From the NCBI RefSeq assembly GCF_000143415.4, contig NW_003314288.1, forward strand, positions 1,550,056 through 1,614,055: DNA of 64,000 nucleotides. Reading direction: 5' to 3'. Below, piece by piece: positions 4,384 to 57,878 of the stretch. The position numbers and the translations under genes are program-made. Under the pieces are notes generated by a model, which was not told the origin of the DNA, ran no database searches, and was given only the letters and a program-made list of their open reading frames with translations. How positions within the stretch are numbered: position 1 is the stretch's first letter; each line of letters begins with the position of its first letter. This DNA is from Selaginella moellendorffii (lineage: Eukaryota > Plantae > Lycopodiophyta).

Positions 4384-5716
4384 CAGAGTTGCATCGCTCG
4401 CTCGCTCCTGCCGCAAACACCAGCGCCGCTCTTTGTCCACCCAGGTGATTTAAGGCTACCTCTCTATCAATCAATCACAAGTACTGACTTGTTTCGTTTG
4501 CGCAGCCTTGGATTGCCGCCTTGGATTGATTTGTTGGAACGCAAACCTCACTGTGAGGGGCCGCAAAAGATAGCAGCGCGATTGGTTTGGTGAGGAGCGG
4601 GTCGTGTGAGAAAGCGTGGACTTGAGAAGGTTCGTTGTGGTACGTGCCCGATTCTTTGATTTTTTCTACTTTTTTCTCGTGTTTTTTTTTCTTTCTTTTT
4701 TATTCTTTCTAGTCTGATAAGATGTAAGATGGCACATCTTTGTTATGCTATTAGTCCCTCCTGGCCTTGCTTATCTCTATGCTTTACTAGTGTGTGCCGC
4801 GTGCCTTTCTTCTTCACATCTCTCACTCGCTCTTACAGGTTCTCTCACAAGGCGCTTCCAGGAGAGTTTTTCAAAGAACGCGGAAAGCAGCGAGAAGACG
4901 ACCGAATCGTGGCCGTCGGTGATGCCCCGTGACGTCACGCGCGTTTTGTGATTCGCTCAGCGCTTGTGAGGTGGAATGCGTCGCCCTCTTGCTGCATTTT
5001 CGACGTTCTTTTCCATTTTTCCATCTGTTTTTCTAGGTGGCCAACCCGGCCCAGTCGCAAGGGAATGATACAAGAAAAACATGGCCACGAAAGGAAATGT
5101 TCCCGCTTGGAGTTATTAGAGCGTGGCAGCCAAGGAGTTGAGCACAAGCGCGATGCTTTTTCCCCTCTCGATTCCAGCTCCAAGAATTTTCAATACTTCC
5201 ACTTGACTTTCCATCTGGAATTTATGTCCAACCAAGTCAAATTGCTGGGGCTGGAGGAAGCTAAACTCAGACTTTGACATTATAGCTGTAGCATCATTCA
5301 GGAGACAAGAGAAAACCCTACTTTTAACTTGCCAGTCCGATTTGAGGGATTGGTCACGCTCCAATTCCAAGAGATAGGCCTTTCAACGCAAATGCATACC
5401 AGGCGGGCGGCGATTTTTCCCTGTATTCCGGAGCATCGTCGTCGTGCTTGGTGACAACATTCCACGCCGCATTCTGTGCACCAATCAAACTCCCCTCGTG
5501 GTCTTTTCTACCAAGATTTGTCAACATGATTGTAAAAGAGAGGCTTTTTATACTTTTGTTTAGAATCCATATCCCCTGCACTAGCTGTCCTTTGATTCTT
5601 TTGAATCTGGAAAAATAAAAGAGGAGATATATCTCATAAATTTATAATTTATAATTTTACGAATTTCCAGTAATATAATAATCTATAGCTGGTATTGACA
5701 AAATAGAGAATAATCA

Positions 5717-5789
5717 GGGGTTGTAGCTCAGATGGTAGAGCGATCGCTTTGCATGCGATAGGTAAGGGGATCGATGCCCCTCAACTCCA
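5717..5789 (+). tRNA. tRNA-Ala (anticodon TGC)
   Basis: Acceptor stem GGGGTTG/CAACTCC with G3:U70; D arm GCTC-AGATGGTA-GAGC; anticodon arm ATCGC-TT-TGC-AT-GCGAT; T arm AGGGG-ATCGATG-CCCCT; AT-rich flanks. Confidence 0.97.
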
Positions 5790-5902
5790 TATATTTAACT
5801 TAATACAATTTATAATTTAAATCATATATTTCATTTAATTTTATATTTTTAAATTATATTTTCACACTGTGAGTACATCTTGGACCTCACAACACATATA
5901 TA

Positions 5903-6977
5903 TCAATAAACCAGTTTGAAGCTGGTTGACACCAACGCGGTCACCGCGTTCATGAGCCGGGGATACGCGCAGCCCGTACAGGGTGGCGCCTTCTCCTTGC
6001 AAATGGCCATACCCGTACCGAGATACAGATCCGGCTCGGTGGTGTACGTGGCCCACTTGTTCTCCAATCTCCACCGTCCATCCTGGAGCCGGAATATCGT
6101 AAACTCTGGCCAATAGTTGATCTTAATGTACTGCTTTGCGTCCACACACACAAACCTCCTGGATAAACAAAGCCAACTAAGAACCCTAATTTCCTTTTCC
6201 TTAAAAGAAGAGAACTTACCAAGCCGACTCCTGGCCACCCCAAATTGGGTCATTGTCCGCGGCAGTGATGCTCCCGTCGCAGTGGAAGAAGCGGGCCAAT
6301 GCCGGCTTGCCATGTGTCGAGGGATCTAACGAATACCAATATTGTCCACAGGCCTAGAGAGCCATGGCGAACTTTTAATCAACCTCTATTTTCTATATAA
6401 TTCTCCTTACGGGTTTAACGCGAAGCTCCCATGTACGGCTGCACATATCGCTGGAAACCAGCCGGTACTGGAAAGAAGAAATTTGTTAGAAGAAAGCTTA
6501 AGATGATATGATAGTAACAAGGCCCAGTAGTAGACGCTAGACTCTTCTGGAAACCTCTTCCACACAAACCTTGCGGGAATCGTCCATGAGGAGCCTGTAG
6601 GCCGCACGGGCAGCAATTGGGCGATGGAGGGCGAGCATCTGGAGGGGGATCTGGGCCCTGAGGCCCAGGAGCTGGGCGAGCAGGGGACGCCATAGCACGT
6701 CCGAGGATGCGAGGCCTCGCCACGATCGGCAAACCAGGCGGCATCGTGCCAAGCTCTGTGCATCCAGCCGCGACATGATGCTCCACTGCAGCAAGTCACT
6801 GCTCACGAGTTCCTCTTGTTCCTCCTCCTCCTCCTCCTCCTCTTCGGGATCATCATCTACCTTCGGATCTCCCCGATCTTCTTCTTTCTGCTCAATCCCT
6901 TCCCGCTGCTTCTTCTTCCTCCTCTTTCTCATGCTGTTGCTGGGAATCGAGCTAGCGACTAGGGCGGCGCCTTCCAT
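5903..6977 (-). CDS. F-box protein (At5g52880/At5g04010-like), multi-exon
   Basis: F-box motif DLLQWSIMSRLDAQSLARCRLVCRSWRGLASSDVLW; downstream exons YWYSLDP...RFFHCDGSITAADNDPIWGGQE and YIKINYWP...WRLENKWATY; poly-E tract. Confidence 0.85.
6744..6764 (-). promoter_or_regulatory. Putative miR536 target site within the F-box CDS
   Basis: + strand TCGTGCCAAGCTCTGTGCATC is near-identical to miR536 as I recall it (UCGUGCCAAGCUGUGUGCA..), so the minus-strand F-box mRNA is complementary to it. Confidence 0.7.
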
Positions 6978-7485
6978 TACCGCTTTACCCCTTTCCGCTT
7001 TGCGCTCTAGAAGCTAATATGCGAGCTCTACTTCCTGGGCTTTTGTCAACTTTGTAAATTCTTCTTTTTTATCTTTTAGTGTGGGACAGGTGTCGGATTG
7101 AAAACAGCGCCTTGTTTAGTGCACAAGTATAGTGGATCATTGTGAGGCTTACATCTAGCCAAAAGCACAGAAATGTAATCCAGGATATTGGATATATTCA
7201 GTATAATTATACTTTGATTTGCAAAAGTGATGGATAGTAAAGCATACGATAGAAAAGTCTGCAGATGGTTCCACATCACTCAGCCTTCCAATGGACAATG
7301 GCATAATCTCCTCAGTGCTAGCTAAGTTTTATAGCCTAACCATGCTCACTGATTCATTGGATTAGTAATTAGATTTCATAGTATATTACCTTTTTATTGT
7401 GTTAAAAATGCTATATTTTAATTATAATAATGCAAACTAACAATGTTTTGATAAGATAAATCATGTTAAGCTATTTGACATAAAC

Positions 7486-7926
7486 ATGATCTGGATTGCT
7501 GCAGTCGTCATGCTTTTGAGTGCCCCACATTCCATGGTGTGTGATACTCTATTAATATATAGTTTGAAACTCACAATTTAACCAGGCTGCTTGTGCATCA
7601 TTCTCAAGAAACTGCCCCTATTTCTACTATGAGCCGTTTGGAGGTGTTTTGTGTGCCCGTTGCGAGTGGAGATATGGCTGGCCAAAGAAGACATTTATAA
7701 ATCTCAACAAGTACCTTAGTAACAAGGATTCAGAGCTTGCCCATGGGGGAGGCTTCCTCTCCACTTGCTACAAGATGAGGGTAATCACTTTAGACACCAG
7801 CAAAGGCAAGTTTGTGGATCTTGCAGATTGTGCCGAGCATATGATTCTCTCTTGCACTGGACAGCTTTTTCTCTGGATACTCACATGACAAACATTAATG
7901 GTAACCTTTAGTGGTGTCAGAAATAA
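7486..7926 (+). pseudogene. Cyanovirin-N homologue (CVNH) copy 1, disrupted
   Basis: Paralogue of 8805-9253 with the same signal-peptide exon (7486-7536) and a 49-bp intron; 1-bp deletion near 7826 (GCAGAT vs GCAGGAT) and CAG->TAG at 7909-7911. Confidence 0.85.
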
Positions 7927-8804
7927 AATATTACAAATTAGCTTGAGTGAAATGATTAGATAAGGCAAAGGAAATTGTTTTTATGATAATTACAAATTTT
8001 TGGCTGAATAACAAAGTTTACTTAAATAATTTGTTATTACAAATATACACAATTATTTCTTTCTGGCTTGCTTAGGCAGCAATATTGTTCATCAAAATGA
8101 TTGTTAGTTTATATTTACTATACATCCCCAAGTGTTTAGGAGTATGATTGGACATGATCAAATGTATATCAGTAATATATAATATGCATATATATAATTT
8201 TTTTTGTTTTATAATTAAATCCCATTATTTATTTTTTAAATTATGGAAATCTAATAATTGATTATAATATAATTATGATTTAGCTACCTAATTAAAAGCT
8301 TAGAGGCCAAAACAAACTCTTGAATAATATCAAATCATTTTACCTCTAGTTTTAAAACCTTTTTAATGATAATTATTCATACTCAAATTTCTAATATTAA
8401 TTAAGAAAAAGAAACATTTTGAGTTCATGAGTTATATTATATTTTTCACATTTTATTTACTAGATATCTAAAATTCATAATTATTTATAATTTAATTTTA
8501 TTGTTAAATATATTTTTTATTTTCTTGAAAACTTACTTGATATTTTATTTTCTTATTTTTATAATATTTTTTGAAAAAAGGAATTGAAATTTAATTAGAA
8601 AATAAATTCTATCATAACAAAAAGCATACAAATTTTATAGAACTCTAAAAAATAAAAAATTGTTAAACACTTATAAATTTTTGTCAATTCGGACGTGCCC
8701 CGTTACTTTTTTATTAAAGAAATATTAGTATACTATAATAAAATAAAAAACATAACAGAATATACTTGTATATTTAAGAGATTTGCGAAGCTATTTGACA
8801 TAAA

Positions 8805-9253
8805 ATGATCTGGATTGCAACAGTCCTCCTGCTTTTGAGTGTACCACATTCCAAGGTGTGTGATACCCTATCCATATATCCATATATAGCTGAAACTCAT
8901 AATTTAATCAGGCTGGCTGTGTACCATTCCCGATAAATTGCCCCACTTTCTCCTACGAACCATTCGGAGGTGTTTTGAACGCCCGTTGCGAGTGGGGATA
9001 TGGCTGGCCAAAGAGGACATTCATAAATCTCAACTACCACCTTAGCAACAAGGATTCGGACCTTGTCCCTGGTGGAGGCTTTGTGTACAGTTGCTACAAG
9101 ATGAGGCTAGTCACAGTGGATGCCGACCAAGGCAAGTATGTGGATCTTGCAGGATGGTGCCGGGGATATGATTCTCAATTGCACTGGACAACTTTCCCTC
9201 TAGATACTAAAATAACAAACGTCAATGGTAACCTTCAGTGGTGTGAGAAATAA
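8805..9253 (+). CDS. Secreted cyanovirin-N homologue (CVNH) lectin, 130 aa; exons 8805-8855 and 8912-9253
   Basis: MIWIATVLLLLSVPHSKAGCVPFPINCPTFSYEPFGGVLNARCEWGYGWPKRTFINLNYHLSNKDSDLVPGGGFVYSCYKMRLVTVDADQGKYVDLAGWCRGYDSQLHWTTFPLDTKITNVNGNLQWCEK: two CV-N-type half repeats (F..xC...L.A.C...I.L...I.N.D/NG.L). Confidence 0.85.
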
Positions 9254-9565
9254 AATTTTTCACAAATTAAAAAAATACAAAGCCAAGCTTGAGTAAAATG
9301 CAAGCAAAGAGCAGGGCTTCGGGCAAAGCAAAGCAATTGTCATTGTTTTTATGGTAAAGGCCAACTATAAAGGAAGTTCGCTTAAATAGTTTTTTATTAT
9401 CGCTAAACGGTATCTACAAGACGTCACAAAGCATAAGAATTACGTACATCCGTTATTTGCGTCTTTCACTTGCTTAGGCAGTAGCGTCGCTCATCACAGT
9501 GTCCTTGGTAGCTTCTGAAAATAGTTTCACAAAAGTTAGCTCCAGGGAAGAGAATAAAACCAAGC

Positions 9566-11581
9566 TTAGTATTGCAAGTTACCCGAGGATGTTTTCTCGT
9601 CCGGTTGCTTCTTGCCTAGGAACGATCCCATGACACCGGTTACTTTGTCCATAACACCTTTTCCCTGTTGGTTTGTAGCACCCGGACTCGCTGGTGTAGC
9701 CTCCGGCGTAGTAGCCTGTGGAGATGAAGCTCCAGTGTTCTTCGATCCGCCACCCAGGGTCAACATGTCAGTGATCTTCTGCGACAAAGCCGTGTCGTGC
9801 TCGTCCGGAGTGAAAAGCTTCGTGTTCTTGCCCTCGCCAGCACCTGTTTCGGTCTCGGTTCCAGCACCGGCACCGTAGCCAAGTTTCGCAGCGACCGCAT
9901 CCTTCGCGCCCATCACCTTCTGCGTTATACCGGACTGAGGAGACTGCGTTGTCGAATCGACGTCACTCGCGGGAGTAGTCTGGGGCGTCTGAGCACCGGT
10001 TCCACCGTATCCCAGCTTCGAAGCAACGGTGTCTTTGACAGCGGTAGCCGAGTCCATCGCCCGGGACGTGACGCTCGGGGTGGTACCAGTGGCGGACTCG
10101 GTTTGCTCGGTGGTTTGTCCCGAGGCTGGTACGTCCGTCGGCCCTGTGCTCGAAGGTAGCTTGCTGCTGACTGTATCCTTTGCAGAGACTGCGGCATCTC
10201 GAGCCTTTTCTGTCCAAGTTTTGGAATCCTGTCCGGTACCTTCCGTGACACCCGTTGGAGCCGTGGGAGAGGTAGTGTCCGTTGTGGATGCCTTGGGCGA
10301 TCCCATAAGAGCGTTCTTCACCGAGAAGACGCTCTCGGAAGCTCTCTGCATCCAGCCCTTCTGTGAGTCACTGGTTTTGAGCTGCGGATCCGATGGAACT
10401 TCGGTATCAACCTGGAGCAAACGTTAATAAGTCTTGAAAACTTTGCAGTTTTTCCACCGTCACAAACCTTATCGCTTGGCGACTTATCGACGACTTCGGA
10501 TGACAAGAGATCACTGCCGCTGCTGTCCACGCCGTCCACAACAGGCTTGGCCTCGTCCTGTGACGCCGAGGGCTTCATAATACCCTCGGGAATCTTCTCC
10601 TCCGTCTTCCCGGCTAGAGCTCCAGCCGCAAGAGAAGACGAATCAGTTTCTCCTCGAGGCTTGCTTTCAAAGCCGCTAGACTCCAATCCTGACGAAAGTC
10701 CGGACGATTCTTGACCTGAAGAACAAAAAAGCTCGAGTCAGAAATATCTATCCCCAAGTTGGTTTCTCATGAGTTACTGACCATGAGCGGCCGGAACTTC
10801 CTCCTGCCTCTTCTTAGTTTCGTCCCATGATGGAGCTTCGCTAGTCGCCGAGCGAGGCTCATCATCGCTGCGAGGCCACTCGGATCCAGGAGCAGGAGCA
10901 CTTGGATCGGCCTGGCCATGCACTCCGCCGCTCAAAAGATCACCACTTTCCTTCTTCTCTGGGCCGAGATCAAGTTCTCTGGATTGGAAATCATGTTCGC
11001 CACCATGAACAGCACCCTCTAGAAAAACACGCAATGAATCTCATCACCAACTTAATTCTATAAACAACGGAAAAGGAAGAACAAAGCTTTACCATGGCGA
11101 GCCTCTGGAGTAGCGGCAGCTCCCTGGTATCCCGTTTGCTGCTGTTCCTGCCAGGCCAAAACAAATCATTAGCAATTCGATGGATCCATCGAAAAGTATC
11201 AGCCAATTTCCTTCCAAGTTACCTGATCATAGCGAGGAGTATCGTCTCCCTGCTCGTCCTCGCTGCTGCTGCTACTGGTGTCGCCGCCGGCGCCCTCGAC
11301 ATTGTCTCCCTGCCCCTCCTTACGCTTCTTGGACTTTCCCTTGATCTTGCCAGTGAGCTTTTTCGCCTTGTCCTTGACCTTGCCCACAACGGATTTCTTC
11401 TTGTGATCGCCCTCCTCCTGAGAGTGCGGAGACTCAGCCTCTTGCTCGCCTGGATGGATCGAGAGAGAAAGAGGGTGAGAACCGAAATCTAGCGAGAAAT
11501 TCTTGCTTTGCTCTGCTTACCGGGTGACATCTTCATGTAATCCCCGCCCTGCTCGCCCGATGGATACGCCTGCGACTGCAT
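9566..11581 (-). CDS. LTI65/RD29/CAP160-like dehydration/cold-induced hydrophilic protein, multi-exon
   Basis: Exon 1 MQSQAYPSG..., exon 2 HKKKSVVGKVKDKAKKLTGKIK, repeated AKDxVASKLGYG, PDEHDTALSQKIT, C-terminal KGVMDKVTGVMGSFLG. Confidence 0.8.
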
Positions 11582-11778
11582 TCCTGCTAGATCTGGACCG
11601 ATCAACCACAAATTCGCTTAGAATCACCGACGATCTCTCTCTTTTCTCTCTCGAGACTCTCTCTTTGCCTTTCGCTATCCCGCTGCGCCCTGCGATTTTA
11701 AGAGAGTGGACGAGCTAAACCTCACACACTAGCGGACATATACAGTTGGCGAGTGCCACTCGTCCCCTTGGCGAGCCA

Positions 11779-11830
11779 CCGCGTGGCGAGGAAAGGACAC
11801 GTAACGCATGACGCGTGTCGTTGTGCCGAC
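11779..11830. promoter_or_regulatory. ABRE/CE3/DRE cluster upstream of the RD29-like gene
   Basis: CCGCGTGGC (11779), ACACGT (11797), ACGCGTGTC CE3 (11811), GCCGAC DRE/CRT core (11825), about 200-250 bp upstream of the ATG. Confidence 0.65.
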
Positions 11831-12138
11831 AAGCCCAGAACAGAAAAAAATCCGCCACCTTTCGGTGGGCGCTGCTGCTGCTGGTGGCCCCTCCAAAAAT
11901 GTCAAAGAATCTGATCTTAGATTCCGGGCCATCCAAATAGCCGGAAGATTCTCGTCCATTTTGCTGTGAGATTCATGATATTATTTTCTGCCAACTTTGA
12001 CAAGTTTTGTTGCCTACCCAATACAGGACGATTATGACACTTTTTTATTGGGTCCGATGAGCAAAAACGAGATGAAATGGATTGAGATAATGGAAAGAAA
12101 GAGAAGATCGATCAAGCAACAAGTAAGATTTGAAGTCC

Positions 12139-12390
12139 ACCGACGAGAACGAAAAAACTAATAGCTCGAGGATTGATCCAATCCCGTCGCCACCTTTCTG
12201 CCCAATCAATTGTTTCAGTGCCTAGCTTCATCTTGTAGCAACTGTACGCATCCAACTATACTTGCATCGGTCCGCATCCACAGTGACTAGCCTCATCTTG
12301 TAGCAACTGTACCGACGAGAATGAAAAAACAAACTGCTTGAAGGATTTGATCCAATCCCATCGCCACCTTTCTGCCCAATCAATAGCTTC
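12139..12390. repeat. Direct repeat of about 78 bp (12139-12216, 12311-12390) flanking inverted CVNH-derived filler DNA (12217-12312)
   Basis: ACCGACGAGAA.GAAAAAAC...GATCCAATCCC.TCGCCACCTTTCTGCCCAATCAAT occurs twice; reverse complement of 12258-12312 matches 9085-9139 at 51/55 nt. Confidence 0.85.
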
Positions 12391-12558
12391 ACAACCAGAA
12401 TTCCATTCTGTGACGTGTGGGGTTTCGATTCATGGCTCGGTCTCCACCACCGTGAAACTCGCTTCTCTCGCGTTAGAACTCTGGCTTCCCCTCGGAGAAA
12501 AGCCTGGGAGCTATCAGAGTTTCTCGAGCGCGCGCTCTCTCTCTCTCTCGCTTCGGAG

Positions 12559-13396
12559 TTAAGTTGCTGCTTTGTCAATGGAGGCTTCGTTTCCTGCGAG
12601 GCCAATCTCTTTGCTGGCCACGGCCAGAAACGCTGCTGCTGCGTCAGCCACCGATTCGCCAGACTTGAGCCTCTTGCTGGAGGAGTGATCGGGTCGCGGC
12701 CGGTTGTTCTTCTTCGTCGTCGTCCTCATTCCAGCTTCTCTCACAAGGAGCTTTTGTTCTGAACGAACGCAGAACAGCGAACGCGAGTGAGAAGCGAAGT
12801 CTTCTCTAGCTATTCTGTATATGTCACCTTCTGTGAGATCAGGAATCCCGTGCTCGATGAAGCGATTCGCGGCCTTGACGTCCAAGCTCAACGTTGGTCG
12901 CGGGGCTGCAAGGAGCGATAAGAACACAACGTAGCACGCAAAAGTTTCATAGACAAAGTCTCGCCTTTGCTTCTATCGCAGGCGTACTGGACCTTCTCGT
13001 CGTAGAGATTCACTCTGTCCTGCAAAACATATAGAGGGCGATCACAAGGAAGAAAGAAAAGAAGATAGAGATAGAACCAACCAGCTCGGATTTCACGGGA
13101 TGATCCTCCGGGCATTCTCCCCGCGTCCTCAAGAGCACTGCCGCAAAGGAGAAAATCTTGCAAATGGAATGAAGAGAATGCGCGATTTCGCGAAGAGCAC
13201 ACTTACAGCAATAGACGGCATTGAGCGCCTTGGACACGGCCATGTAGGCCGAGGCGCGATCCGCCGGCGCCAGCAGCGCCAATGCATCCGGCGACCAGGA
13301 ATTCAGGAGCTTCTTCATGTGCTGCTCCAGCCGCTCCAATCGATCGTCCATGCCGCTCACGCCCTCCATCACTTCCTCCGGGATAGGGGCCGCCAT
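12559..13396 (-). CDS. C1D: C1D/Rrp47 (Sas10/Utp3/C1D family) nuclear exosome cofactor, multi-exon
   Basis: LAPADRASAYMAVSKALNAVYC-LLRTRGECPEDHPVKSEL-DRVNLYDEKV...RPTLSLDVKAANRFIEHGIPDLT. Confidence 0.9.
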
Positions 13397-13488
13397 CGTC
13401 TCCTCTAAAACCTCCAGGGTTAGGGCTTCCAAGTTCTTGCGATTTAAAACCCTTCGCTCTTTACCTTTAGGTTTGTCTTTGCGTGGAA

Positions 13489-15886
13489 ATGGAGCGATCT
13501 GGAAATGGCGCCAGCTCCAGCAGCTCCGGGAAGGAGATCGCGGATGCCGCCAGCGATCAGGGCTCCATCGATACGTCGGAATCGGTGCAGGAGCCCGGAT
13601 CCTCAGGTAATCTTTCCTGGACAAGGGCTTTGGCTATCGGATGCTACCGAGATTTTGCCCGAATTCCCGCATTTCTTGCGTCCTCGCAGACGGCGAGGCC
13701 AAGCAGGCGATGGAAAACAAGGAAGACGAGGAGCTATCGCGAGGCGTGAATGAGATTTCCATTGCCAAGGGTCAGAGTGACGGAGATCCAAATCGCAGCT
13801 CATCTGGGGAATCTTCTGGAACAAATGGTGCTGGAGGAGAGGAGATCGCGCGTCGTGTTTCACATGATGGAAATAGCTGGGTCCCTGGAAAGAGACATGC
13901 AGACGAGGTGAGAATTCATCCTTTGTTTCTCTTTTCACTCTCTCCTTCTCAAAATTTTATTTTATTTTCTGGCACAGGATGATAGTAGCGAGTCATGGCG
14001 TAAACACAAGAAGCACTTCTTTGTTCTCAGCAATGCCGGAAAGCCTATATACTCCAGGTGTGGTTTTTCTCTGTTGCTACGCTGTTCTTGATCTTCGTTG
14101 TTTAGATATGGAGATGAGCACAAGTTGGCTGGCTTCTCCGCAACACTACAGGCAATCATGTCGTTTGTAATAACTAGGTACATTCCATGGCTTCCTTTCT
14201 TCTTTTCCTTCATTTTGATTCTTTGGATTTACAGCGGAGATTGCCTGCAACTGGTGCGTGCTGGAAATCATCAGGTTGGTTTGTTTTTCTGAAGGGTTTA
14301 CTTCAAGTAATTTGCTTGCAGATCGTTTTTCTAGTAAAAGGACCGCTGTACCTTGTATCGATTAATTCCACGGAGGAGCCGTATCAGGCTATGAAACGTC
14401 AGTTAGAGCTCCTTCATGGCCAGGTATGCTTCCTTGACGATACTGTTGCCACTAACCGGGTACAAGCTTAGCTTTTTCTCATCCTCACGAAAGCTGTGGA
14501 AAGATGTTTCGCGAAGCATGCCACCTTTGATATGAAGACCTTGTTGGGAGGAACGGACATCGTGCTTTCGTCCTTGGTGCACTCATTTAATTGGTAAGGT
14601 GCATCGTAAAAGGTGAAGAAAGCTGATTGATTCGCTGTTCATGTTCAGGAACTTTACTGTATTCCTCCATGCGTATGCCTGCTTGCCACTGCCATATGCT
14701 GCGAGGCAGACCGCAGGAGCCGCATTACAAGATATTGCAGAATCCGGCGTGCTGTTTGCACTTCTGATGTCGGGATATAAGGTCGTACGCTCTGTCTTAT
14801 TGCGGTTGTAATCTCCATTTTCAGGTCATCAACATGGTGGGACCTCGCAAGGCTTCTCTTCACCCGGACGACCTGTTCCTTCTTTCCAACTTTGTTTCGT
14901 CGTCGGATTCATTCCGGTAATCTTACATATACTGGCGTTGCTTGCTGATATTCACCATTCTGCAGAACAACAGAGTCCTTTTCTCCAGTATGTCTGCCAC
15001 ACTATAATCCGAATGCGTTTGTGTATGCGTATGTTCAGTACCTTACTGTAAGGACTGCCTGACAATGGGATCTAGATACTATGTCATGATGTTCCTGCAG
15101 GAGAGCGTTTATCTTGTGCTGATTTCAACATCCTTGGATAGCTTCTATCATTTGAAAGATTGCAGGTTTGTGAAGGGATTATGTTATGGTTTATGAGTCT
15201 AATGAGCCTTTCAGAGCGCGAGTTGAGATGATATTGAAGAAGTCTCGAGTTCTAGGCGAGATGAGTCGTTCAGTGGAACGAGGGGGCTTACGTGTGAAAG
15301 ATCTGTCTTTAGACTCACAGAACGGATTTACTACGAGGAAGCCAGATGTCGTTCGTGAGAATACCAAGACGCTTTTGGGGGGTCCAGCAGGCCTTTGGCA
15401 CTTTCTATACAGGAGTACCTATCTCGATCAGTATGTTGCTTCCGAGTTTACACCGCCGTTGCATACATACGCAGCCCAGAAAAAGTACGTAGAAGTTTAC
15501 AGTTGCTGTTCTGACTAGCTTTCAATGGCCTCAGGTTGTTTAGAGCGTACCAACGCATCCATTTCTCTATGCATGACGAAAACGGGGGTCATCACAAGAT
15601 GCAGTACAGGAGAGACGAGAACTATGGTCTGTTCCGTTCTGTAAATATTAAAGTAGCTGTCACATTTGTGCTTGCAGTGCTGATGTACTGGAGAACGTCC
15701 GATTTTGAGCTCTACGCGGCTTTTGATCCCCTGGCAGAGAAGGTAAAGCTCGGTTGGTTTTCGTGCTCTGTAACATTCTGTGTAACGCAGAGTGCGGCCA
15801 TCAGAGTTTCGAACCTCGTCTGTCAATGGCTTCGAAATCTAGAAAGTGAAGTGTTTTTGCTAGGTGCAACTTCATTTAACTGGTGA
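13489..15886 (+). CDS. MON1: Vacuolar fusion protein MON1 (SAND family), many exons
   Basis: [42 protein letters not shown]; [12 protein letters not shown]; LHPDDL; [12 protein letters not shown]; GGPAGLWHF; [13 protein letters not shown]. Confidence 0.95.
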
Positions 15887-16683: not shown

Positions 16684-17041
16684 TCACGGGAACCCGAGCT
16701 CTGGAGGAGATCGTCGGACTAAGTACCTCCCGGGCAACATGTTACCGACGGGATTGGGACCCGACGGCACCTCGTGAAGCATCCTCCGGAATTCAGCATC
16801 ACTCAAAGCAGCAATGGTCGAGGCAGGGGGTCCGGACGGAAAATAGTGGAGACGATGGTCAGCTGGGAACAGGAGATCAGAAAAGGAAAAGCAGTGTGAG
16901 CAGCATTGGATCAAGCAGGTAGAGAAAGAAAGAGCTCGATCAAGTACCTGGAGGAACCAGTCTTGCCGCTCCAAGCGTAGCAGCAGAGAAGATGATCACA
17001 AGGACAAGTAGGAGGCGCGCACGCATTGCGGATTGATCCAT
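16684..17041 (-). CDS. CLE peptide precursor, H-type (TDIF/CLE41/44-like), about 90 aa; exons 17041-16948 and 16862-16684
   Basis: Spliced: MDQSAMRARLLLVLVIIFSAATLGAARLVPPADHRLHYFPSGPPASTIAALSDAEFRRMLHEVPSGPNPVGNMLPGRYLVRRSPPELGFP; signal peptide plus CLE box HEVPSGPNPVGN at 16776-16741; GT...CAG intron with a pyrimidine tract. Confidence 0.9.
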
Positions 17042-39556: not shown

Positions 39557-40057
39557 GACGATCGCGGATCTAGCCCAGGCGCCTCAATTGGAAATCAAAA
39601 CCCTCGTGAACCCTAATTTGCATACTAATAGCACTAATGTAATTACTAATTGATAACAGAACCAATTTTATTGATATTGTTGCATGCTTAACAAATTGGT
39701 TTTGACTGGACATCAGAGATCTTAAGCCATACGTGGGATTAAGTTGCAAAGGTCATTCTTTTGGTGGGATTGCAGACATTGGACCTCAGTAAAATATGAA
39801 GAGTGGAATTCCTAAATTTGTAATGATATAGCCATTACTATGAGTAGCTTAAAGGAGAGTGGCTTTATGATTTGATTATTTAACTTTAATTTATTAATGC
39901 ATAATAAAAAAAAATAGATCAAATATAAGTATTAAAAAACAACTTGATTTATATTTTTTCTACTACATATTTTTTTAAAAAAGTTCATTCAAAAAGTGTA
40001 GAGAAACATAAAACATGACAAAAGGAAAAGCTTTTGCAATAACAATAAAATTCATCT

Positions 40058-40221
40058 TGTGAGTGCATAGGGAATACAGAAATGTGCATATTAATTAACC
40101 CAAAAACCCTAACTTATATACAGGAGCGAGTGGTCCGGATTGAAACTAATCCGACGACTACCAAAATCCTACTACGCTAATATTAGTATACGGCATCATA
40201 GCCATACACTTGGCCCTCACA
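40058..40221 (-). repeat. 3' LTR (164 bp)
   Basis: Aligns to 46592-46766 with 13 substitutions and one 11-bp indel. Confidence 0.95.
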
Positions 40222-46591: not shown

Positions 46592-46766
46592 TGTGAGTGC
46601 ATGAAATATGGAAAGGGAATACAGAAATGTGCATATTAATTAACCCAAAAACTTTAGCTTATATACAAGAGCGAGTGGTCTGAATTGAAACCAATCCGAC
46701 GGCTACCAAAATCCCACTATGCTAATATTAGTATACAGCATCGTAGCCGTACACTTGGCCCTCACA
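46592..46766 (-). repeat. 5' LTR (175 bp)
   Basis: Paired with 40058-40221; adjacent to the PBS. Confidence 0.95.
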
Positions 46767-49160
46767 ATCTATTAAATATCTTATTATATACTAAAAAATA
46801 ATTGATGAAATATTTACTAGACTTTTGTGATTATTTTTATAATCATAACCCAATAACTTAGCCTTAAGTATCTTTTAATATATATGGCTAAATATATTAC
46901 TATAAACTATTTTATTTAAACTAAATAACATAAAAATACTGATATGATTACAATTATATACAAGAAAAGATGAACTAGATTATCCTAATAAGTATATAAT
47001 ATATAATATATAGAAAATAAAGGATAAAAGACTTTGTAAATTCCTAAATTTAAACTTCCCAAGATGTTATAAGGCCTAATATTAATCAAAGCCAAGGATC
47101 ATTAACCATAAATATTCCAAAGCTTTTAATTGATTAAGAAAGTGGATACACTTTTGTTCATATGCCTTTTCTTTCTATATTTAAGCCCTTGTGGATTGTC
47201 TCTTAAATCATTCCTTTTAGTTACTTACAAAATTTATCAGATCTAAATATTATTAAAATGATTATTTTTATTAATTACTTATTTACTAAAAATATTGCCA
47301 CTAAAACCTTAACAAAATATTCTTTATTGTTTTAGAATATTCTAAAATATTCTTATTATTAACAAAAGCTCTCTTGGCTCCTTGTTGACATGGCTCCCTA
47401 TATTGGAAAATCCCTCCCTACTCATTTGATTAAGATAGCGTCGTTAGGACATATGCAGAGTAATATCTATATGTGCTTGTAACAATGTGCACTGTGTACA
47501 AATTCCAAGGTGTTATATAGATTTAGCATAATGGACCTCAAGCAAGCTATGACCATGCTAATCATCCCTTATATCAATCAAACATTAGCACTTTATAGTC
47601 AAAATTATCATTTTGAAATACTAAGCCACCTTGCACCACACCTCCCCTACAATCTATTGTAAACACATTGTTATTGATATGTATAAAAAGACATAATTTT
47701 CACTTAATTGTAAACTAAGAAACCAAGCAAAAATACTATATTATGGCCCTCCCACACATTCATTATATCCTCTATTTCATTGAACTCCTTTGCCTAATTG
47801 CCTCGCATGTGATTAGGCCAACAAAATTGTAAAATTACCCTATAATAATATTTATATGGAGTTGGTCCTCTTTTGTTTATTGTCACAAGCATACTTCTGA
47901 TATATAGATAAATAACACTACCAAGTATGCAGTATTATTTTGACCCTCTTTAAACGCTTACATGTGTAAATAATTCTATGTAAATAGATGCTTTAATGCT
48001 TTAGCTTGCAATATGTAAAAAAGAAGTTACGTCAAAATCATATATTCGATATGGCAGAGAAAATTTACTTTCAATGCACTATAGCTTTACAGGTGATTCC
48101 ACATTGAAATGCATGTGGGGAATTAGCTCTTTCGCAAAACTCATTTTAAACAAATACAAGCTAATGTACCTTTTATTAATTTTCAGCTCACTCTATATCT
48201 ATATCTTTTAATTTACCATTGATATACATAAGCCCTACATTATCAAATTCTGACATTGTGAGAGAAGTTTTTCAAAAAGCATTTCAATTATAACAACTTT
48301 TAGAAAACTAATTCTCTTGATATAATTTTGAAGTAAATATATAACAAACTCCTTTGCCTTTAGTTACTCCGTCCTTTGTTTTGCATCTCTCTAATTTGTT
48401 TGTCCCACTTCCACTTGCTGTGGCTGTGTGTCTTGGATCGAGATTGCCTTGAATTTTGGACGATTCCCGTGCACCAACCACCCGGCAGCTTCACCTGGAG
48501 TGCAGTTAGCCCGCCCACAAGCTTGACTTCATACCTCATGCGAGGAAGACATACGGTCTTCCTCGCTTCATGCTATGCTCCATGTGCATGTGCTGTTCTT
48601 GATTGCTTACTTGGATAGCATTGTACGCCCTGATACAAGAAAACAATCTGAGTTACAAAATCCTCTCGATCTCGTTGGAAGATTCAGTGATCGTACATGT
48701 TGATTGATTCAATCATGGATTGAAACTTAGTGAAGATTTAGAGTTGGAGGGAGCTTGGGAGTTTCAGTATCGTGGCTCCTCGCACATGAGCGTACAAATT
48801 CAGTTCCCTATCGATCAATCAAACTCCCTCTCCTCTCTTAGCTTTCAAGTCTAAACCAGACTCCAATAAAGGTTTTCAGGTGGATAGATGGCATTGTTGT
48901 CTTCCAGGATTCCGGCTGAGAATACGCCATGGCTAGATCCGCTTGAGAGTGGCAGAGGTTTTTGAAGGGAGCTTCATGCGGGCGCTAGAGGAGCTTCTCC
49001 TCACAGCCTCGAACAGATGCATAGTGGCGAATGCATTATGCACAAGTCCCTGGTAAGTGAGGTGCATATGCTGAACTTTATTATCAAACAGTGATAGTTT
49101 AAGCTTGCAAACATTCTATTCACTCGAGCTCATGATATACCATTGGTCTCACTTGGGATT

Positions 49161-56681: not shown

Positions 56682-57878
56682 ATGGCGATGGCAGCAGTGC
56701 CTTACTCTTGTCTCGTCCGTCTCCAGCGTTCCAGGCCCCACATTGTGCCCGCAAGATGCTCTTCTCCCGGCCCTGCGACGATCGGATGCTGCCGCTGGAA
56801 GAAAACGTGGTATTTCTCCGGATTTCTCAGCAGGAGGCCGCTCGATCCGGCTAGGGCTCTCGACGAGGAGGGATACTACGTCCAGGAGGAGCAGGATTAC
56901 ATCCATCCCAGGTATCCTTTCAGCAACCAGTTCAATCCCGTGGACGACCGGACGCTGCTCGAGAAGGCCGCGGACGAGCTGGAGAAGATCACCCCGCTCA
57001 AGGCCGTCAAGATCGCGACGCTGGCGGCGCTGGTCTGGACGGCCGCGCAGTGGTTCCTTGGCGCGGTGGTTTTCAACTCAAGCTTGTGGATGTACGCGAG
57101 CTGGGCGCTCATCTTCTGGCCATGGCCGGCTGCGCTGCTCGTCGGCGCTGGCGCGTGCTTCCTGGCTCACAAGCGCTACACTCGGTGGGACGATCGAAAG
57201 TACCGGACAAGAGCTCGCGACAGAGATGCGCTGATAATCATCGCGGGGGCGCTGCTATGGCTCATCCTCGTCCCTCTCGGCCACTTCCAAGGCTACGTCG
57301 AAGGCTTCCCGGCGATCTTCTATGGCGTCTACTGCGCCTTCTTCATGTTTGAGAGGATGATCCGGATGAGAGTCTATGGCAAGACTGATACAGGCCCAGA
57401 GGACAAGGACTGGGCTCTTCCGGTGAGCCGCGCGACTTGGATTGGGTTCGCGGGATCGGTGGTGGCGGGGCACTGGCTGGCGGCGTTTGAGTCGCCGCCG
57501 CTGGTGGAGAGCTGGAACCTCGGGTGGCAGGCAAAGGTGGCGGCGGTGATGGTGCTGGCGGCGCTGGCGCTCAAGTACTACGGGACTTACTTCCTTCTCA
57601 AGTTCTCCAAGAAGGTGGACAGTCCAAACATCGTGGTGCCGTTCGGGCCTTACCGCTGGGTGAGGCATCCCATCTATGGCAGCAGCATTCTCCTCTTCTC
57701 GGCGTTTTGCCTGGCGCTGCGAGCCTACGGAAGTATGGCGCTCATCCTCGCCGGCTGCCTCTTCTACTACGAGCAGCTGGTCCAGCGCGAGGAGGAGCTA
57801 CTACTCAAGCATTTTGGCGAGGAGTATGGAAGCTACAAGAGGAGTGTGACCAAGAAGTACGTACCTTACTTGTACTGA
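56682..57878 (+). CDS. Isoprenylcysteine carboxyl methyltransferase (ICMT/PEMT)-family membrane protein, intronless, possible plastid transit peptide
   Basis: Multiple TM helices; C-terminal GPYRWVRHPIY and EE..L...FGEEY..Y...V motifs. Confidence 0.85.
   Translation: MAMAAVPYSCLVRLQRSRPHIVPARCSSPGPATIGCCRWKKTWYFSGFLSRRPLDPARALDEEGYYVQEEQDYIHPRYPFSNQFNPVDDRTLLEKAADELEKITPLKAVKIATLAALVWTAAQWFLGAVVFNSSLWMYASWALIFWPWPAALLVGAGACFLAHKRYTRWDDRKYRTRARDRDALIIIAGALLWLILVPLGHFQGYVEGFPAIFYGVYCAFFMFERMIRMRVYGKTDTGPEDKDWALPVSRATWIGFAGSVVAGHWLAAFESPPLVESWNLGWQAKVAAVMVLAALALKYYGTYFLLKFSKKVDSPNIVVPFGPYRWVRHPIYGSSILLFSAFCLALRAYGSMALILAGCLFYYEQLVQREEELLLKHFGEEYGSYKRSVTKKYVPYLY

What the first reader, a model, noticed from the sequence alone, without database searches (positions are those of the whole stretch)
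7468..9500. Tandem pair of secreted cyanovirin-N homologue lectin genes in an AT-rich island, one live and one dead
Seen in sequence: after splicing a 56-bp intron, 8805-9253 gives a 130-aa protein with a signal peptide and two internally similar halves. The four core Cys align with the two CV-N disulfides, and an extra N-/C-terminal Cys pair could form a third bond. An upstream paralogue (7486-7926) has a frameshift and a nonsense codon, and the 3' flanks are duplicated too. Established knowledge: CV-N is a cyanobacterial high-mannose-binding antiviral lectin, and CVNHs are patchily distributed (cyanobacteria, ascomycetes, seed-free plants), which is usually read as horizontal transfer. Inference: a fast-evolving apoplastic defence-lectin locus undergoing birth and death, with divergent binding loops and possibly new glycan specificity.
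Basis: partly seen in the sequence, partly recalled or inferred. Interest (0 to 1): 0.8.

Follow-up and report, generated by a model that had tools for sequence, protein, structure and literature searches.

The report
Unannotated cyanovirin-like lectin gene pair, Selaginella
Two side-by-side copies of a small secreted cyanovirin-type sugar-binding protein gene in the spikemoss Selaginella moellendorffii, one intact and one broken differently on each parental chromosome; they are missed members of a lectin family already known to be large in this plant.

Summary
Copy 2 (8805-9253, + strand) is a two-exon gene. Its second exon (113 aa) scores above the Pfam CVNH cut-off (37 vs 24.5 bits). It folds with high confidence (pLDDT 91.6), and the 25 best PDB fold matches are all cyanovirin-N homologues (22 of them at TM 0.73-0.83).

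Copy 1 (7486-7926) is 82% identical in DNA and carries a 1-bp deletion and a TAG.

New here:
- The window is Selaginella moellendorffii, the alternative haplotype of GL377569.1.
- On that other haplotype copy 2 is also intact. Copy 1 there lacks both lesions but has its own 10-bp deletion at the intron/exon-2 border. So copy 1 was disabled independently on both chromosomes.
- The intron position and the extra N-/C-terminal cysteine pair are shared with annotated Selaginella CVNH genes.
- The nearest relatives are Selaginella paralogues at about 30% identity, so this is not a recent transfer.
- The coding sequence is not AT-rich (47% GC). Only the 878-bp spacer is (20%).
- No gene is annotated at the allelic locus.

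Expression is nearly nil in the RNA sampled, and no junction reads were found.

The family is already known to be expanded in this species (27 models). The scan also noted other hidden CVNH genes elsewhere in this genome. Lectin activity and glycan specificity remain untested.

The parts
8788..8804 (+). copy 2: conserved leader just upstream of the ATG; 5' limit of the detectable duplication
   Evidence: blastn copy2 8788-9269 = copy1 7468-7940, 82%; alignment
8805..8855 (+). copy 2 exon 1: 17 codons, hydrophobic signal-peptide-like leader
   Evidence: translation; protein identical on the other haplotype; same 17-codon exon 1 in paralogue P0003
8856..8911 (+). copy 2 intron, 56 bp, GT..AG, phase 0
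   Evidence: sequence. The unspliced frame stops at 8936. The copy 1 intron is 49 bp, yet the frame is kept after splicing. Same intron position in L001 and L002. Expressed neighbour introns are 56 and 68 bp. No junction reads.
8912..9253 (+). copy 2 exon 2: whole mature CVNH domain (113 aa) plus TAA; AATAAA overlaps the stop
   Evidence: Pfam CVNH 37 bits, E 6e-9; PDB phmmer; AF2 pLDDT 91.6; Foldseek TM 0.79-0.83 to the best-ranked monomeric CVNH structures; intact on haplotype 2 with 3 aa changes
7468..7536 (+). copy 1: conserved leader and exon 1 (ATG at 7486)
7537..7585 (+). copy 1 intron, 49 bp
7586..7926 (+). copy 1 exon 2 remnant. In this haplotype it has a 1-bp deletion between 7825 and 7826 and a TAG at 7909-7911. 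On the other haplotype a 10-bp deletion corresponds to window 7585-7594.
   Evidence: Pfam CVNH 18 bits on the first piece
7927..8095 (+). copy 1 3' flank, patchy collinear copy of 9254-9500
   Evidence: local alignment 7962-8039 = 9325-9399, score 44 vs 20 +/- 2.8
8096..8787 (.). AT-rich spacer between the copies (about 20% GC), no repeat elsewhere in the window
9254..9500 (+). copy 2 3' flank. From 9380 it overlaps the last exon and poly(A) sites of the convergent CAP160-repeat gene.
   Evidence: read starts at 9379/9380/9401 and intron 9515-9582; Pfam CAP160
12218..12312 (-). two short relic fragments of CVNH exon 2 (55 nt at 92.7% and 33 nt at 90.9% to copy 2) inside a ~172-bp tandem duplication
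   Evidence: also present on haplotype 2

Best explanation
This is a tandem duplicate of a small two-exon gene of the plant branch of the cyanovirin-N homologue (CVNH) lectin family, in Selaginella moellendorffii. It is absent from the annotation examined.

Shown: Copy 2 encodes a 17-residue hydrophobic leader, then a phase-0 intron, then a single 113-residue CVNH domain. The domain has the two family disulfides plus an N-/C-terminal Cys pair typical of plant CVNHs.

Inferred: The leader directs the protein into the secretory pathway. There the three disulfides form, and the pseudo-symmetric two-lobed domain binds glycans outside the cell. Mannose-containing oligosaccharides of microbes are the default expectation from characterised CVNHs.

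Shown: Copy 1 arose from a duplication old enough to reach dS of about 0.4. It stayed under purifying selection for most of that time (dN/dS 0.42, all Cys kept). It is now a pseudogene, with different disabling lesions on the two haplotypes of the sequenced plant.

A third, fragmentary relic 3 kb away fits repeated gain and loss at this locus. Transcription of copy 2 is very low or conditional.
For: Family and fold:
- Pfam CVNH 37 bits against a cut-off of 24.5.
- phmmer to solved CVNHs 2jzj, 2y1s and CV-N at E about 4e-6.
- ESM Atlas: 27 of 30 nearest clusters are CVNH.
- AF2 pLDDT 91.6, pTM 0.83.
- The Foldseek top 25 are all CVNH structures; 22 have TM 0.73-0.83, and the rest are three domain-swapped CV-N crystal forms at TM about 0.4.

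Organism and haplotype:
- Exact match of window ORF 56682-57875 to an S. moellendorffii protein cluster.
- RLK ORF 99% identical to SELMODRAFT_81328.
- L003 is collinear with the window at 97.8%.

Splice model:
- Same phase-0 intron one residue before the first Cys in P0003 and P0012.
- The two copies' introns differ by 7 bp, yet both restore the frame.

Third disulfide: co-presence or co-absence of the terminal Cys pair across homologues.

Constraint:
- dN 0.17, dS 0.40, Fisher p = 0.003.
- Copy 2 is intact on both haplotypes.

Pseudogene: a 1-bp deletion plus TAG in this haplotype, and a 10-bp deletion plus M9K in the leader on the other.

Unannotated:
- No protein in the word search shares words with exon 2.
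- No hit closer than 44 bits among 1.84 billion representatives.
- No gene is called between the CAP160 and F-box genes in L003.
Against: - Two raw RNA-seq libraries that cover the neighbouring gene at 400-1000x gave no reads on copy 1. On copy 2 they gave at most one partial read.
- The only other transcript hint is a 178-nt contig of depth 4.5 in one further run. No read spans 8855|8912.
- Between haplotypes, copy 2 exons (98.5-100%) are no better conserved than the spacer (98.75%). Its five exon-2 differences are 3 non-synonymous and 2 synonymous, so allelic data give no sign of constraint.
- The leader has no basic n-region, and no signal-peptide predictor was run.
- Six of about ten CV-N domain-B sugar contacts are replaced (alignment mapped to residues partly from my own knowledge). 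Sugar binding is therefore not assured.
Confidence: 0.78

Rival explanations
1. Both copies are dead or dying. Copy 2 would be a silent, unannotated relic whose reading frame has simply not been hit yet.
For: Near-zero RNA in two deep libraries. Allelic divergence in copy 2 exons equals that of the neutral-looking spacer, with 3 non-synonymous and 2 synonymous differences. The 878-bp spacer also has no indels between haplotypes, so an intact 393-bp frame is not surprising by itself.
Against: All six Cys and the family motifs are kept. The AF2 fold is confident from a shallow alignment. dN/dS of 0.42 over dS 0.40 shows long-term constraint. A 178-nt exon-2 contig appears in a run that otherwise shows only spliced exonic contigs in this stretch. 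The sister copy collected three separate lesions over the same period while copy 2 collected none.
Confidence: 0.17
2. Copy 1 is functional, and its lesions are sequencing or assembly errors.
For: Each lesion is seen in only one assembled haplotype. The 1-bp deletion sits in a G/GG context. The TAG would remove only five residues.
Against: Each haplotype has its own disabling change, including a 10-bp deletion that is not a typical base-calling error. The other haplotype also has a Lys in the hydrophobic core of the leader. No RNA reads at all.
Confidence: 0.04
3. The locus is a recent horizontal acquisition from a fungus or cyanobacterium, marked by its AT-rich setting.
For: CVNHs are patchily distributed, and transfer between fungi, bacteria and an embryophyte ancestor has been proposed (PMC6362431). 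The spacer is 20% GC.
Against: The best full-length hits are S. moellendorffii, Diphasiastrum and Ceratodon proteins. No cyanobacterial hit reaches E 1e-3. The pair groups with Selaginella paralogues (82/93 support). The spliceosomal intron position is shared with paralogues. CDS GC equals the genome's. Four other islands below 30% GC lie in the same 64 kb.
Confidence: 0.02
4. Copy 2 is expressed, but its CVNH scaffold no longer binds mannose oligosaccharides. It would act through another ligand: a different glycan, a protein partner, or direct antimicrobial action.
For: Positions aligned to CV-N contacts E41, N53, E56, T75, R76 and Q78 are S, G, Y, G, Y and S (alignment; contact list partly from PMC11952781, partly my own knowledge). 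Both contact loops carry Gly-Tyr and flanking Trp. 18 of 113 residues are aromatic. CVNHs are reported to vary widely in binding-site residues.
Against: Characterised CVNHs with divergent sites still bind Man-alpha-1,2-Man in at least one lobe (established knowledge: Koharudin et al. 2008, cited). E27, N46, D48 and N103 match CV-N E23, N42, D44 and N93.
Confidence: 0.2

Closest known systems
Annotated Selaginella moellendorffii CVNH proteins (XP_024533524.1 = P0003, SELMODRAFT_406066 = P0012, SELMODRAFT_406500 = P0013, SELMODRAFT_429951 = P0005)
   Same: Same species. Signal leader followed by a single CVNH domain. Same phase-0 intron just before the mature N-terminus. Same C-x6-C start and W-C end (except P0013). 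A longer hairpin between the third and fourth core Cys than in CV-N.
   Different: Only 26-29% identical to these four. The window pair sits on a long branch of its own. It is not annotated. Loop residues differ.
CrCVNH of the fern Ceratopteris richardii (PDB 2jzj) and CtCVNH of C. thalictroides
   Same: Seed-free plant CVNH with a predicted signal peptide (PMC3645700). phmmer gives 30.6 bits, Foldseek TM 0.79. The C-terminal Cys aligns with C111.
   Different: 29% identity over the Foldseek alignment. The seven-residue hairpin extension at V67-Q73 is lacking in the fern protein's alignment.
Cyanovirin-N of Nostoc ellipsosporum
   Same: Same fold (TM 0.80-0.82, rmsd 1.5-1.8 A to monomeric crystal forms). 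Both disulfides (C8-C22, C58-C73) have aligned Cys. The [ND]-x-x-[IL]-x-N-x-[DN]-G-x-L motifs are present in both halves.
   Different: CV-N is bacterial, has no intron or eukaryotic leader, and has two disulfides rather than three. Identity is 23-28%. Most domain-B sugar contacts are replaced here.
Microvirin of Microcystis aeruginosa (PDB 2y1s)
   Same: Monomeric single-domain CVNH lectin of similar length. phmmer 30.2 bits over residues 6-108. TM 0.79.
   Different: Cyanobacterial; lacks the terminal Cys pair context and the plant gene structure.

Membership tests
CVNH (Pfam PF08881, cyanovirin-N homologues) | Sequence match to the family profile above the curated cut-off | tested here: met
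   Copy 2 exon 2: 37 bits vs 24.5, E 6e-9, profile positions 15-102 of 102. Copy 1 first piece: 18 bits, below the cut-off as expected for a fragment.
CVNH (Pfam PF08881, cyanovirin-N homologues) | CV-N fold: two pseudo-symmetric lobes, each a triple-stranded sheet plus a hairpin | tested here: met
   AF2 pLDDT 91.6 with ten strands. Foldseek top 25 are all CVNH structures; 22 have TM 0.73-0.83 and three domain-swapped crystal forms score about 0.4.
CVNH (Pfam PF08881, cyanovirin-N homologues) | Internal tandem sequence repeat of about 50 residues | tested here: inconclusive
   Pairwise local alignment of the halves scores 19 against 21.8 +/- 4.6 in shuffles. Only the shared T-F-x-L-[ND]..N-x-[DN]-x-[DN]-L motif is visible by eye.
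CVNH (Pfam PF08881, cyanovirin-N homologues) | Two intradomain disulfides equivalent to CV-N C8-C22 and C58-C73 | tested here: met
   C26, C61 and C83 align to C22, C58 and C73. C10, C26, C61 and C83 are nearly invariant columns. Bond formation itself was not tested.
CVNH (Pfam PF08881, cyanovirin-N homologues) | Binding of Man-alpha-1,2-Man / high-mannose glycans | not testable with these tools
   Several aligned contact residues are replaced. This needs a glycan array or NMR titration.
Secreted plant-type CVNH (lycophyte/moss/fern group) | N-terminal signal leader, phase-0 intron before the mature domain, terminal Cys pair | tested here: met
   Leader and Cys pair are shared with P0003, P0004, P0005, P0007, P0008, P0010 and P0012. 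The intron position is shared with P0003 and P0012. No signal-peptide predictor was run.
Processed or unprocessed pseudogene (copy 1) | Disabling lesions in an otherwise alignable paralogue, no transcripts | tested here: met
   Unprocessed, since the intron is kept. 1-bp deletion and TAG in this haplotype; 10-bp deletion at the acceptor/exon 2 start on the other. Zero reads.

The most novel reading that the evidence does not exclude
The window pair, together with the other 'hidden' CVNH genes the scan noted in this genome, would represent a very divergent, unannotated lycophyte CVNH lineage. Its aromatic Gly-Tyr/Trp contact loops and extended hairpin would give a glycan specificity unlike the oligomannose binding of known CVNHs. 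It would be expressed only under particular conditions such as infection. That would make it a new lectin reagent and a conditional defence gene missed by annotation.
Probability: 0.12. Interest if true: 0.55.

Novelty: new member of a known kind. Interest (0 to 1): 0.3.

Why it matters
It adds an unannotated locus to a lectin family already reported as unusually large in S. moellendorffii: 27 cyanovirin models, 11.8% of its lectins (PMC6362431 supplement). With the scan's other notes, this suggests that small two-exon CVNH genes are under-counted in this genome.

The two haplotypes carry different null alleles of copy 1. That is a tidy snapshot of gene death in progress after a tandem duplication.

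The protein is only about 30% identical to any known CVNH, so its sugar specificity is worth a glycan array. Nothing here changes what is known about the family's fold, origin or mechanism.

Tried and rejected
- The word-indexed protein search with exon 2 found nothing. With the family alignment it found only four Selaginella proteins, so no deeper alignment or broad phylogeny could be built.
- The three top-scoring or longest hits of the exhaustive search (P0001, P0002, P0011; 638-6116 aa) are repetitive proteins without a CVNH Pfam match. I set them aside as compositional matches.
- The internal-repeat test by pairwise alignment was not significant.
- Homology of the two upstream regions beyond about 18 bp before the ATG was not convincing: score 45 vs 33 +/- 4.4, non-collinear. 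The promoter may not have been part of the detectable duplication.
- The spacer has no repeat elsewhere in the window, so a transposon origin could not be shown.
- The bacterial-type promoter/terminator scan is irrelevant for a plant gene.
- Cyanobacterial and fern sequences were not added to the tree.
- The single read-laying run gave no junction reads. No further runs could be laid.
Full report
**What is in the sequence**

On the + strand, an ATG at 8805 opens a 17-codon hydrophobic leader. It ends at a GT at 8856. A 56-bp intron ends with AG at 8910-8911. From 8912 an open frame of 113 codons runs to TAA at 9251-9253. Without splicing, the frame from the ATG stops at 8936, so the intron is needed to join the leader to the domain.

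A second copy lies upstream, from the ATG at 7486 to 7926. blastn aligns 7468-7940 to 8788-9269 at 82% identity, and MAFFT shows the same. Copy 1 has a 49-bp intron, a 1-bp deletion between 7825 and 7826, and a TAG at 7909-7911 where copy 2 has CAG. The introns differ by 7 bp, yet both copies return to the same frame after splicing. That comparison supports the intron model.

The 3' flanks are homologous in patches as far as about 8095/9500. The block 7962-8039 against 9325-9399 scores 44, compared with 20 +/- 2.8 in shuffles. Upstream, similarity stops about 18 bp before the ATG.

**Family and fold**

- Exon 2 of copy 2 matches Pfam CVNH at 37 bits (cut-off 24.5, E 6e-9) across nearly the whole profile.
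- phmmer against PDB sequences finds the fern CVNH 2jzj, microvirin 2y1s and cyanovirin-N constructs at E about 4e-6.
- In the ESM Atlas, 27 of the 30 nearest clusters are CVNH.
- AlphaFold2 with a 13-row alignment gives mean pLDDT 91.6 and pTM 0.83, with ten strands.
- The 25 best Foldseek matches in the PDB are all CVNH structures. Twenty-two have TM 0.73-0.83; the other three are domain-swapped CV-N crystal forms at about 0.4.
- C26, C61 and C83 align with CV-N C22, C58 and C73. With C10 they form nearly invariant columns. CV-N's bonds are C8-C22 and C58-C73 (PMC3645700).
- The two halves are not significantly similar by pairwise alignment. The internal repeat is seen in the fold and the motifs, not in a statistical test.

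**Organism and haplotypes**

The neighbours are an LRR receptor kinase and a CAP160-repeat protein. Window ORF 56682-57875 is an exact match to a protein in the cluster of XP_002964474.2 of Selaginella moellendorffii. The kinase ORF is 99% identical to SELMODRAFT_81328.

The locus around that kinase on scaffold GL377569.1 (L003) is collinear with window 4400-14444, at 97.8% identity in aligned positions. RNA reads over the neighbouring gene show second alleles at about 40%. The window is therefore the alternative haplotype of the sequenced heterozygous plant.

**The allelic comparison**

On L003, copy 2 is intact. Its exon 1 protein is identical, the intron is 56 bp, and exon 2 has three amino-acid changes (F18L, T68I, Q73E) and two synonymous changes. 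All six Cys and the stop are unchanged.

Copy 1 on L003 has neither the 1-bp deletion nor the TAG. Instead it lacks 10 bp corresponding to window 7585-7594, at the acceptor and the first codons of exon 2, including the first Cys. That puts the rest of exon 2 out of frame. It also has a Lys in the middle of the leader.

Each haplotype therefore carries its own disabling change. By parsimony, copy 1 was still intact when the haplotypes diverged. Copy 1 is dying now, in two different ways.

Between the copies, dN is 0.17, dS is 0.40 and dN/dS is 0.42 (Fisher p = 0.003). All Cys are kept. So both copies were under purifying selection for most of their history.

The allelic data alone do not show constraint on copy 2. 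Its exons (98.5-100%) are no more conserved than the spacer (98.75%).

**Relatives**

- The exhaustive phmmer search of 1.84 billion representatives gave only 13 hits at E <= 1e-3.
- Three of these are large repetitive proteins with no CVNH domain and were discarded.
- Most of the rest are small proteins with a leader and one CVNH domain (P0006 and the fungal P0009 hold two). They come from S. moellendorffii (four clusters), the lycophyte Diphasiastrum, the moss Ceratodon and unnamed assemblies. P0009 is from Hyaloraphidium. Identity to the query is 26-35% in the family alignment and up to 39% in the search.
- In a small maximum-likelihood tree, the window pair sits with the Selaginella paralogues (support 82/93) on a long branch.
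- Paralogues P0003 and P0012 have a phase-0 intron at the same place, one residue before the first Cys. P0003 even has a 17-codon exon 1.
- The N-terminal and C-terminal Cys are both present in the window's two copies and eight other homologues, and both absent in P0013/P0018. This fits a third disulfide tying the termini, and shows the feature belongs to the plant group rather than to this gene alone.
- None of this points to a recent transfer.

Published work already lists 27 cyanovirin-domain gene models in S. moellendorffii and records the family in bryophytes, lycophytes and ferns (PMC6362431).

**Annotation and expression**

No protein in the 5.8-billion-cluster collection shares words with exon 2. 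No gene is called between the CAP160 and F-box genes on L003. The pair is therefore unannotated there.

Two raw RNA-seq libraries cover the convergent CAP160 gene at 400-1000x and show its 56- and 68-bp introns. They give no reads on copy 1, and at most one partial read on copy 2.

A third run, which shows spliced CAP160 contigs, has one 178-nt contig on 8972-9149 at depth 4.5. No read crosses 8855|8912. Expression is thus very low or conditional, and the splice junction rests on comparative evidence only.

**Composition**

Copy 2's coding sequence is 47% GC (GC3 of exon 2 is 51%), against 48.6% for the window. The AT-rich feature is the 878-bp spacer (19.7% GC) and, less so, the region upstream of copy 1 (33.7%). 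Four other stretches below 30% GC lie in the same 64 kb. One annotated paralogue also sits beside a long AT-rich stretch, while another does not.

**Sugar sites**

I used the CV-N alignment. The contact list comes partly from PMC11952781 (Ser52 and Lys74 in the main site; Lys3, Gln6, Glu23 and Thr25 in the second site). The rest comes from my own knowledge of the CV-N/dimannose structures.

- Matching positions: E27, N46, D48 and N103 correspond to CV-N E23, N42, D44 and N93.
- Replaced positions: E41, N53, E56, T75, R76 and Q78 correspond to S, G, Y, G, Y and S.
- Both contact loops read x-G-Y with flanking Trp.
- Seven of 19 mapped positions differ between the copies, against 34 of 113 overall. 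There is no enrichment.
- Specificity cannot be inferred. CVNHs are known to vary in these residues.

**Mechanism proposed**

- Shown: the gene structure, family, fold, duplication, lesions and relatives.
- Inferred: the leader takes the protein into the secretory pathway. Three disulfides then lock a monomeric two-lobed domain, which binds glycans outside the cell, most likely on microbial surfaces, as in other CVNH lectins.
- The defence role is a guess from family and location only.

The joined 130-residue protein was never submitted to any tool, so no whole-protein look-up or signal-peptide test was done.

**Verdict**

The 'live and dead' reading is confirmed and sharpened by the second haplotype. 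The AT-rich island, transfer and fast-evolution parts of the interpretation are not supported. It is a new, very divergent, unannotated member of a family already known to be expanded in this species.

Noticed in passing
window 12139-12391 (- strand sense): A ~172-bp tandem duplication carries two short pieces of CVNH exon 2: 12312-12258 at 92.7% and 12250-12218 at 90.9% to copy 2. These are closer to copy 2 than copy 1 is. The structure lies just 3' of a - strand ORF and is also present on the other haplotype. It may be a third, fragmentary relic or a captured gene piece.
   Followed up: partly
window 9380-10500+ (- strand): A CAP160-repeat (cold-acclimation/LTI65-like) gene converges on copy 2. 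It is very highly expressed. RNA shows introns at 9515-9582 and 10409-10464, poly(A) sites near 9380 and 9401, and about 40% second-allele reads. Its last exon overlaps the duplicated 3' flank, so a piece of its 3' UTR was copied along with CVNH copy 1.
   Followed up: partly
tree; window 7586-7926 vs 8912-9253: With Selaginella paralogues as a distant outgroup, the intact copy 2 lineage has the longer branch (0.37) and the pseudogene copy 1 the shorter (0.13). This hints that copy 2 is the more derived protein. The outgroup is too distant to trust the polarity.
   Followed up: no
window 5601-5900, 39701-40200, 46601-47500, 47901-48400: Four other stretches below 30% GC lie in a window that averages 48.6% GC. 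I did not examine what they are.
   Followed up: no
L003 7401-8482 (window about 5900-7000, - strand): An annotated F-box gene lies head-to-head with CVNH copy 1. The 470-bp region between them (34% GC) would have to serve both promoters.
   Followed up: no
window 16684-17041: Another first-stage note (s1-405417) proposes a hidden two-exon TDIF-like CLE peptide gene here. I did not examine it.
   Followed up: no
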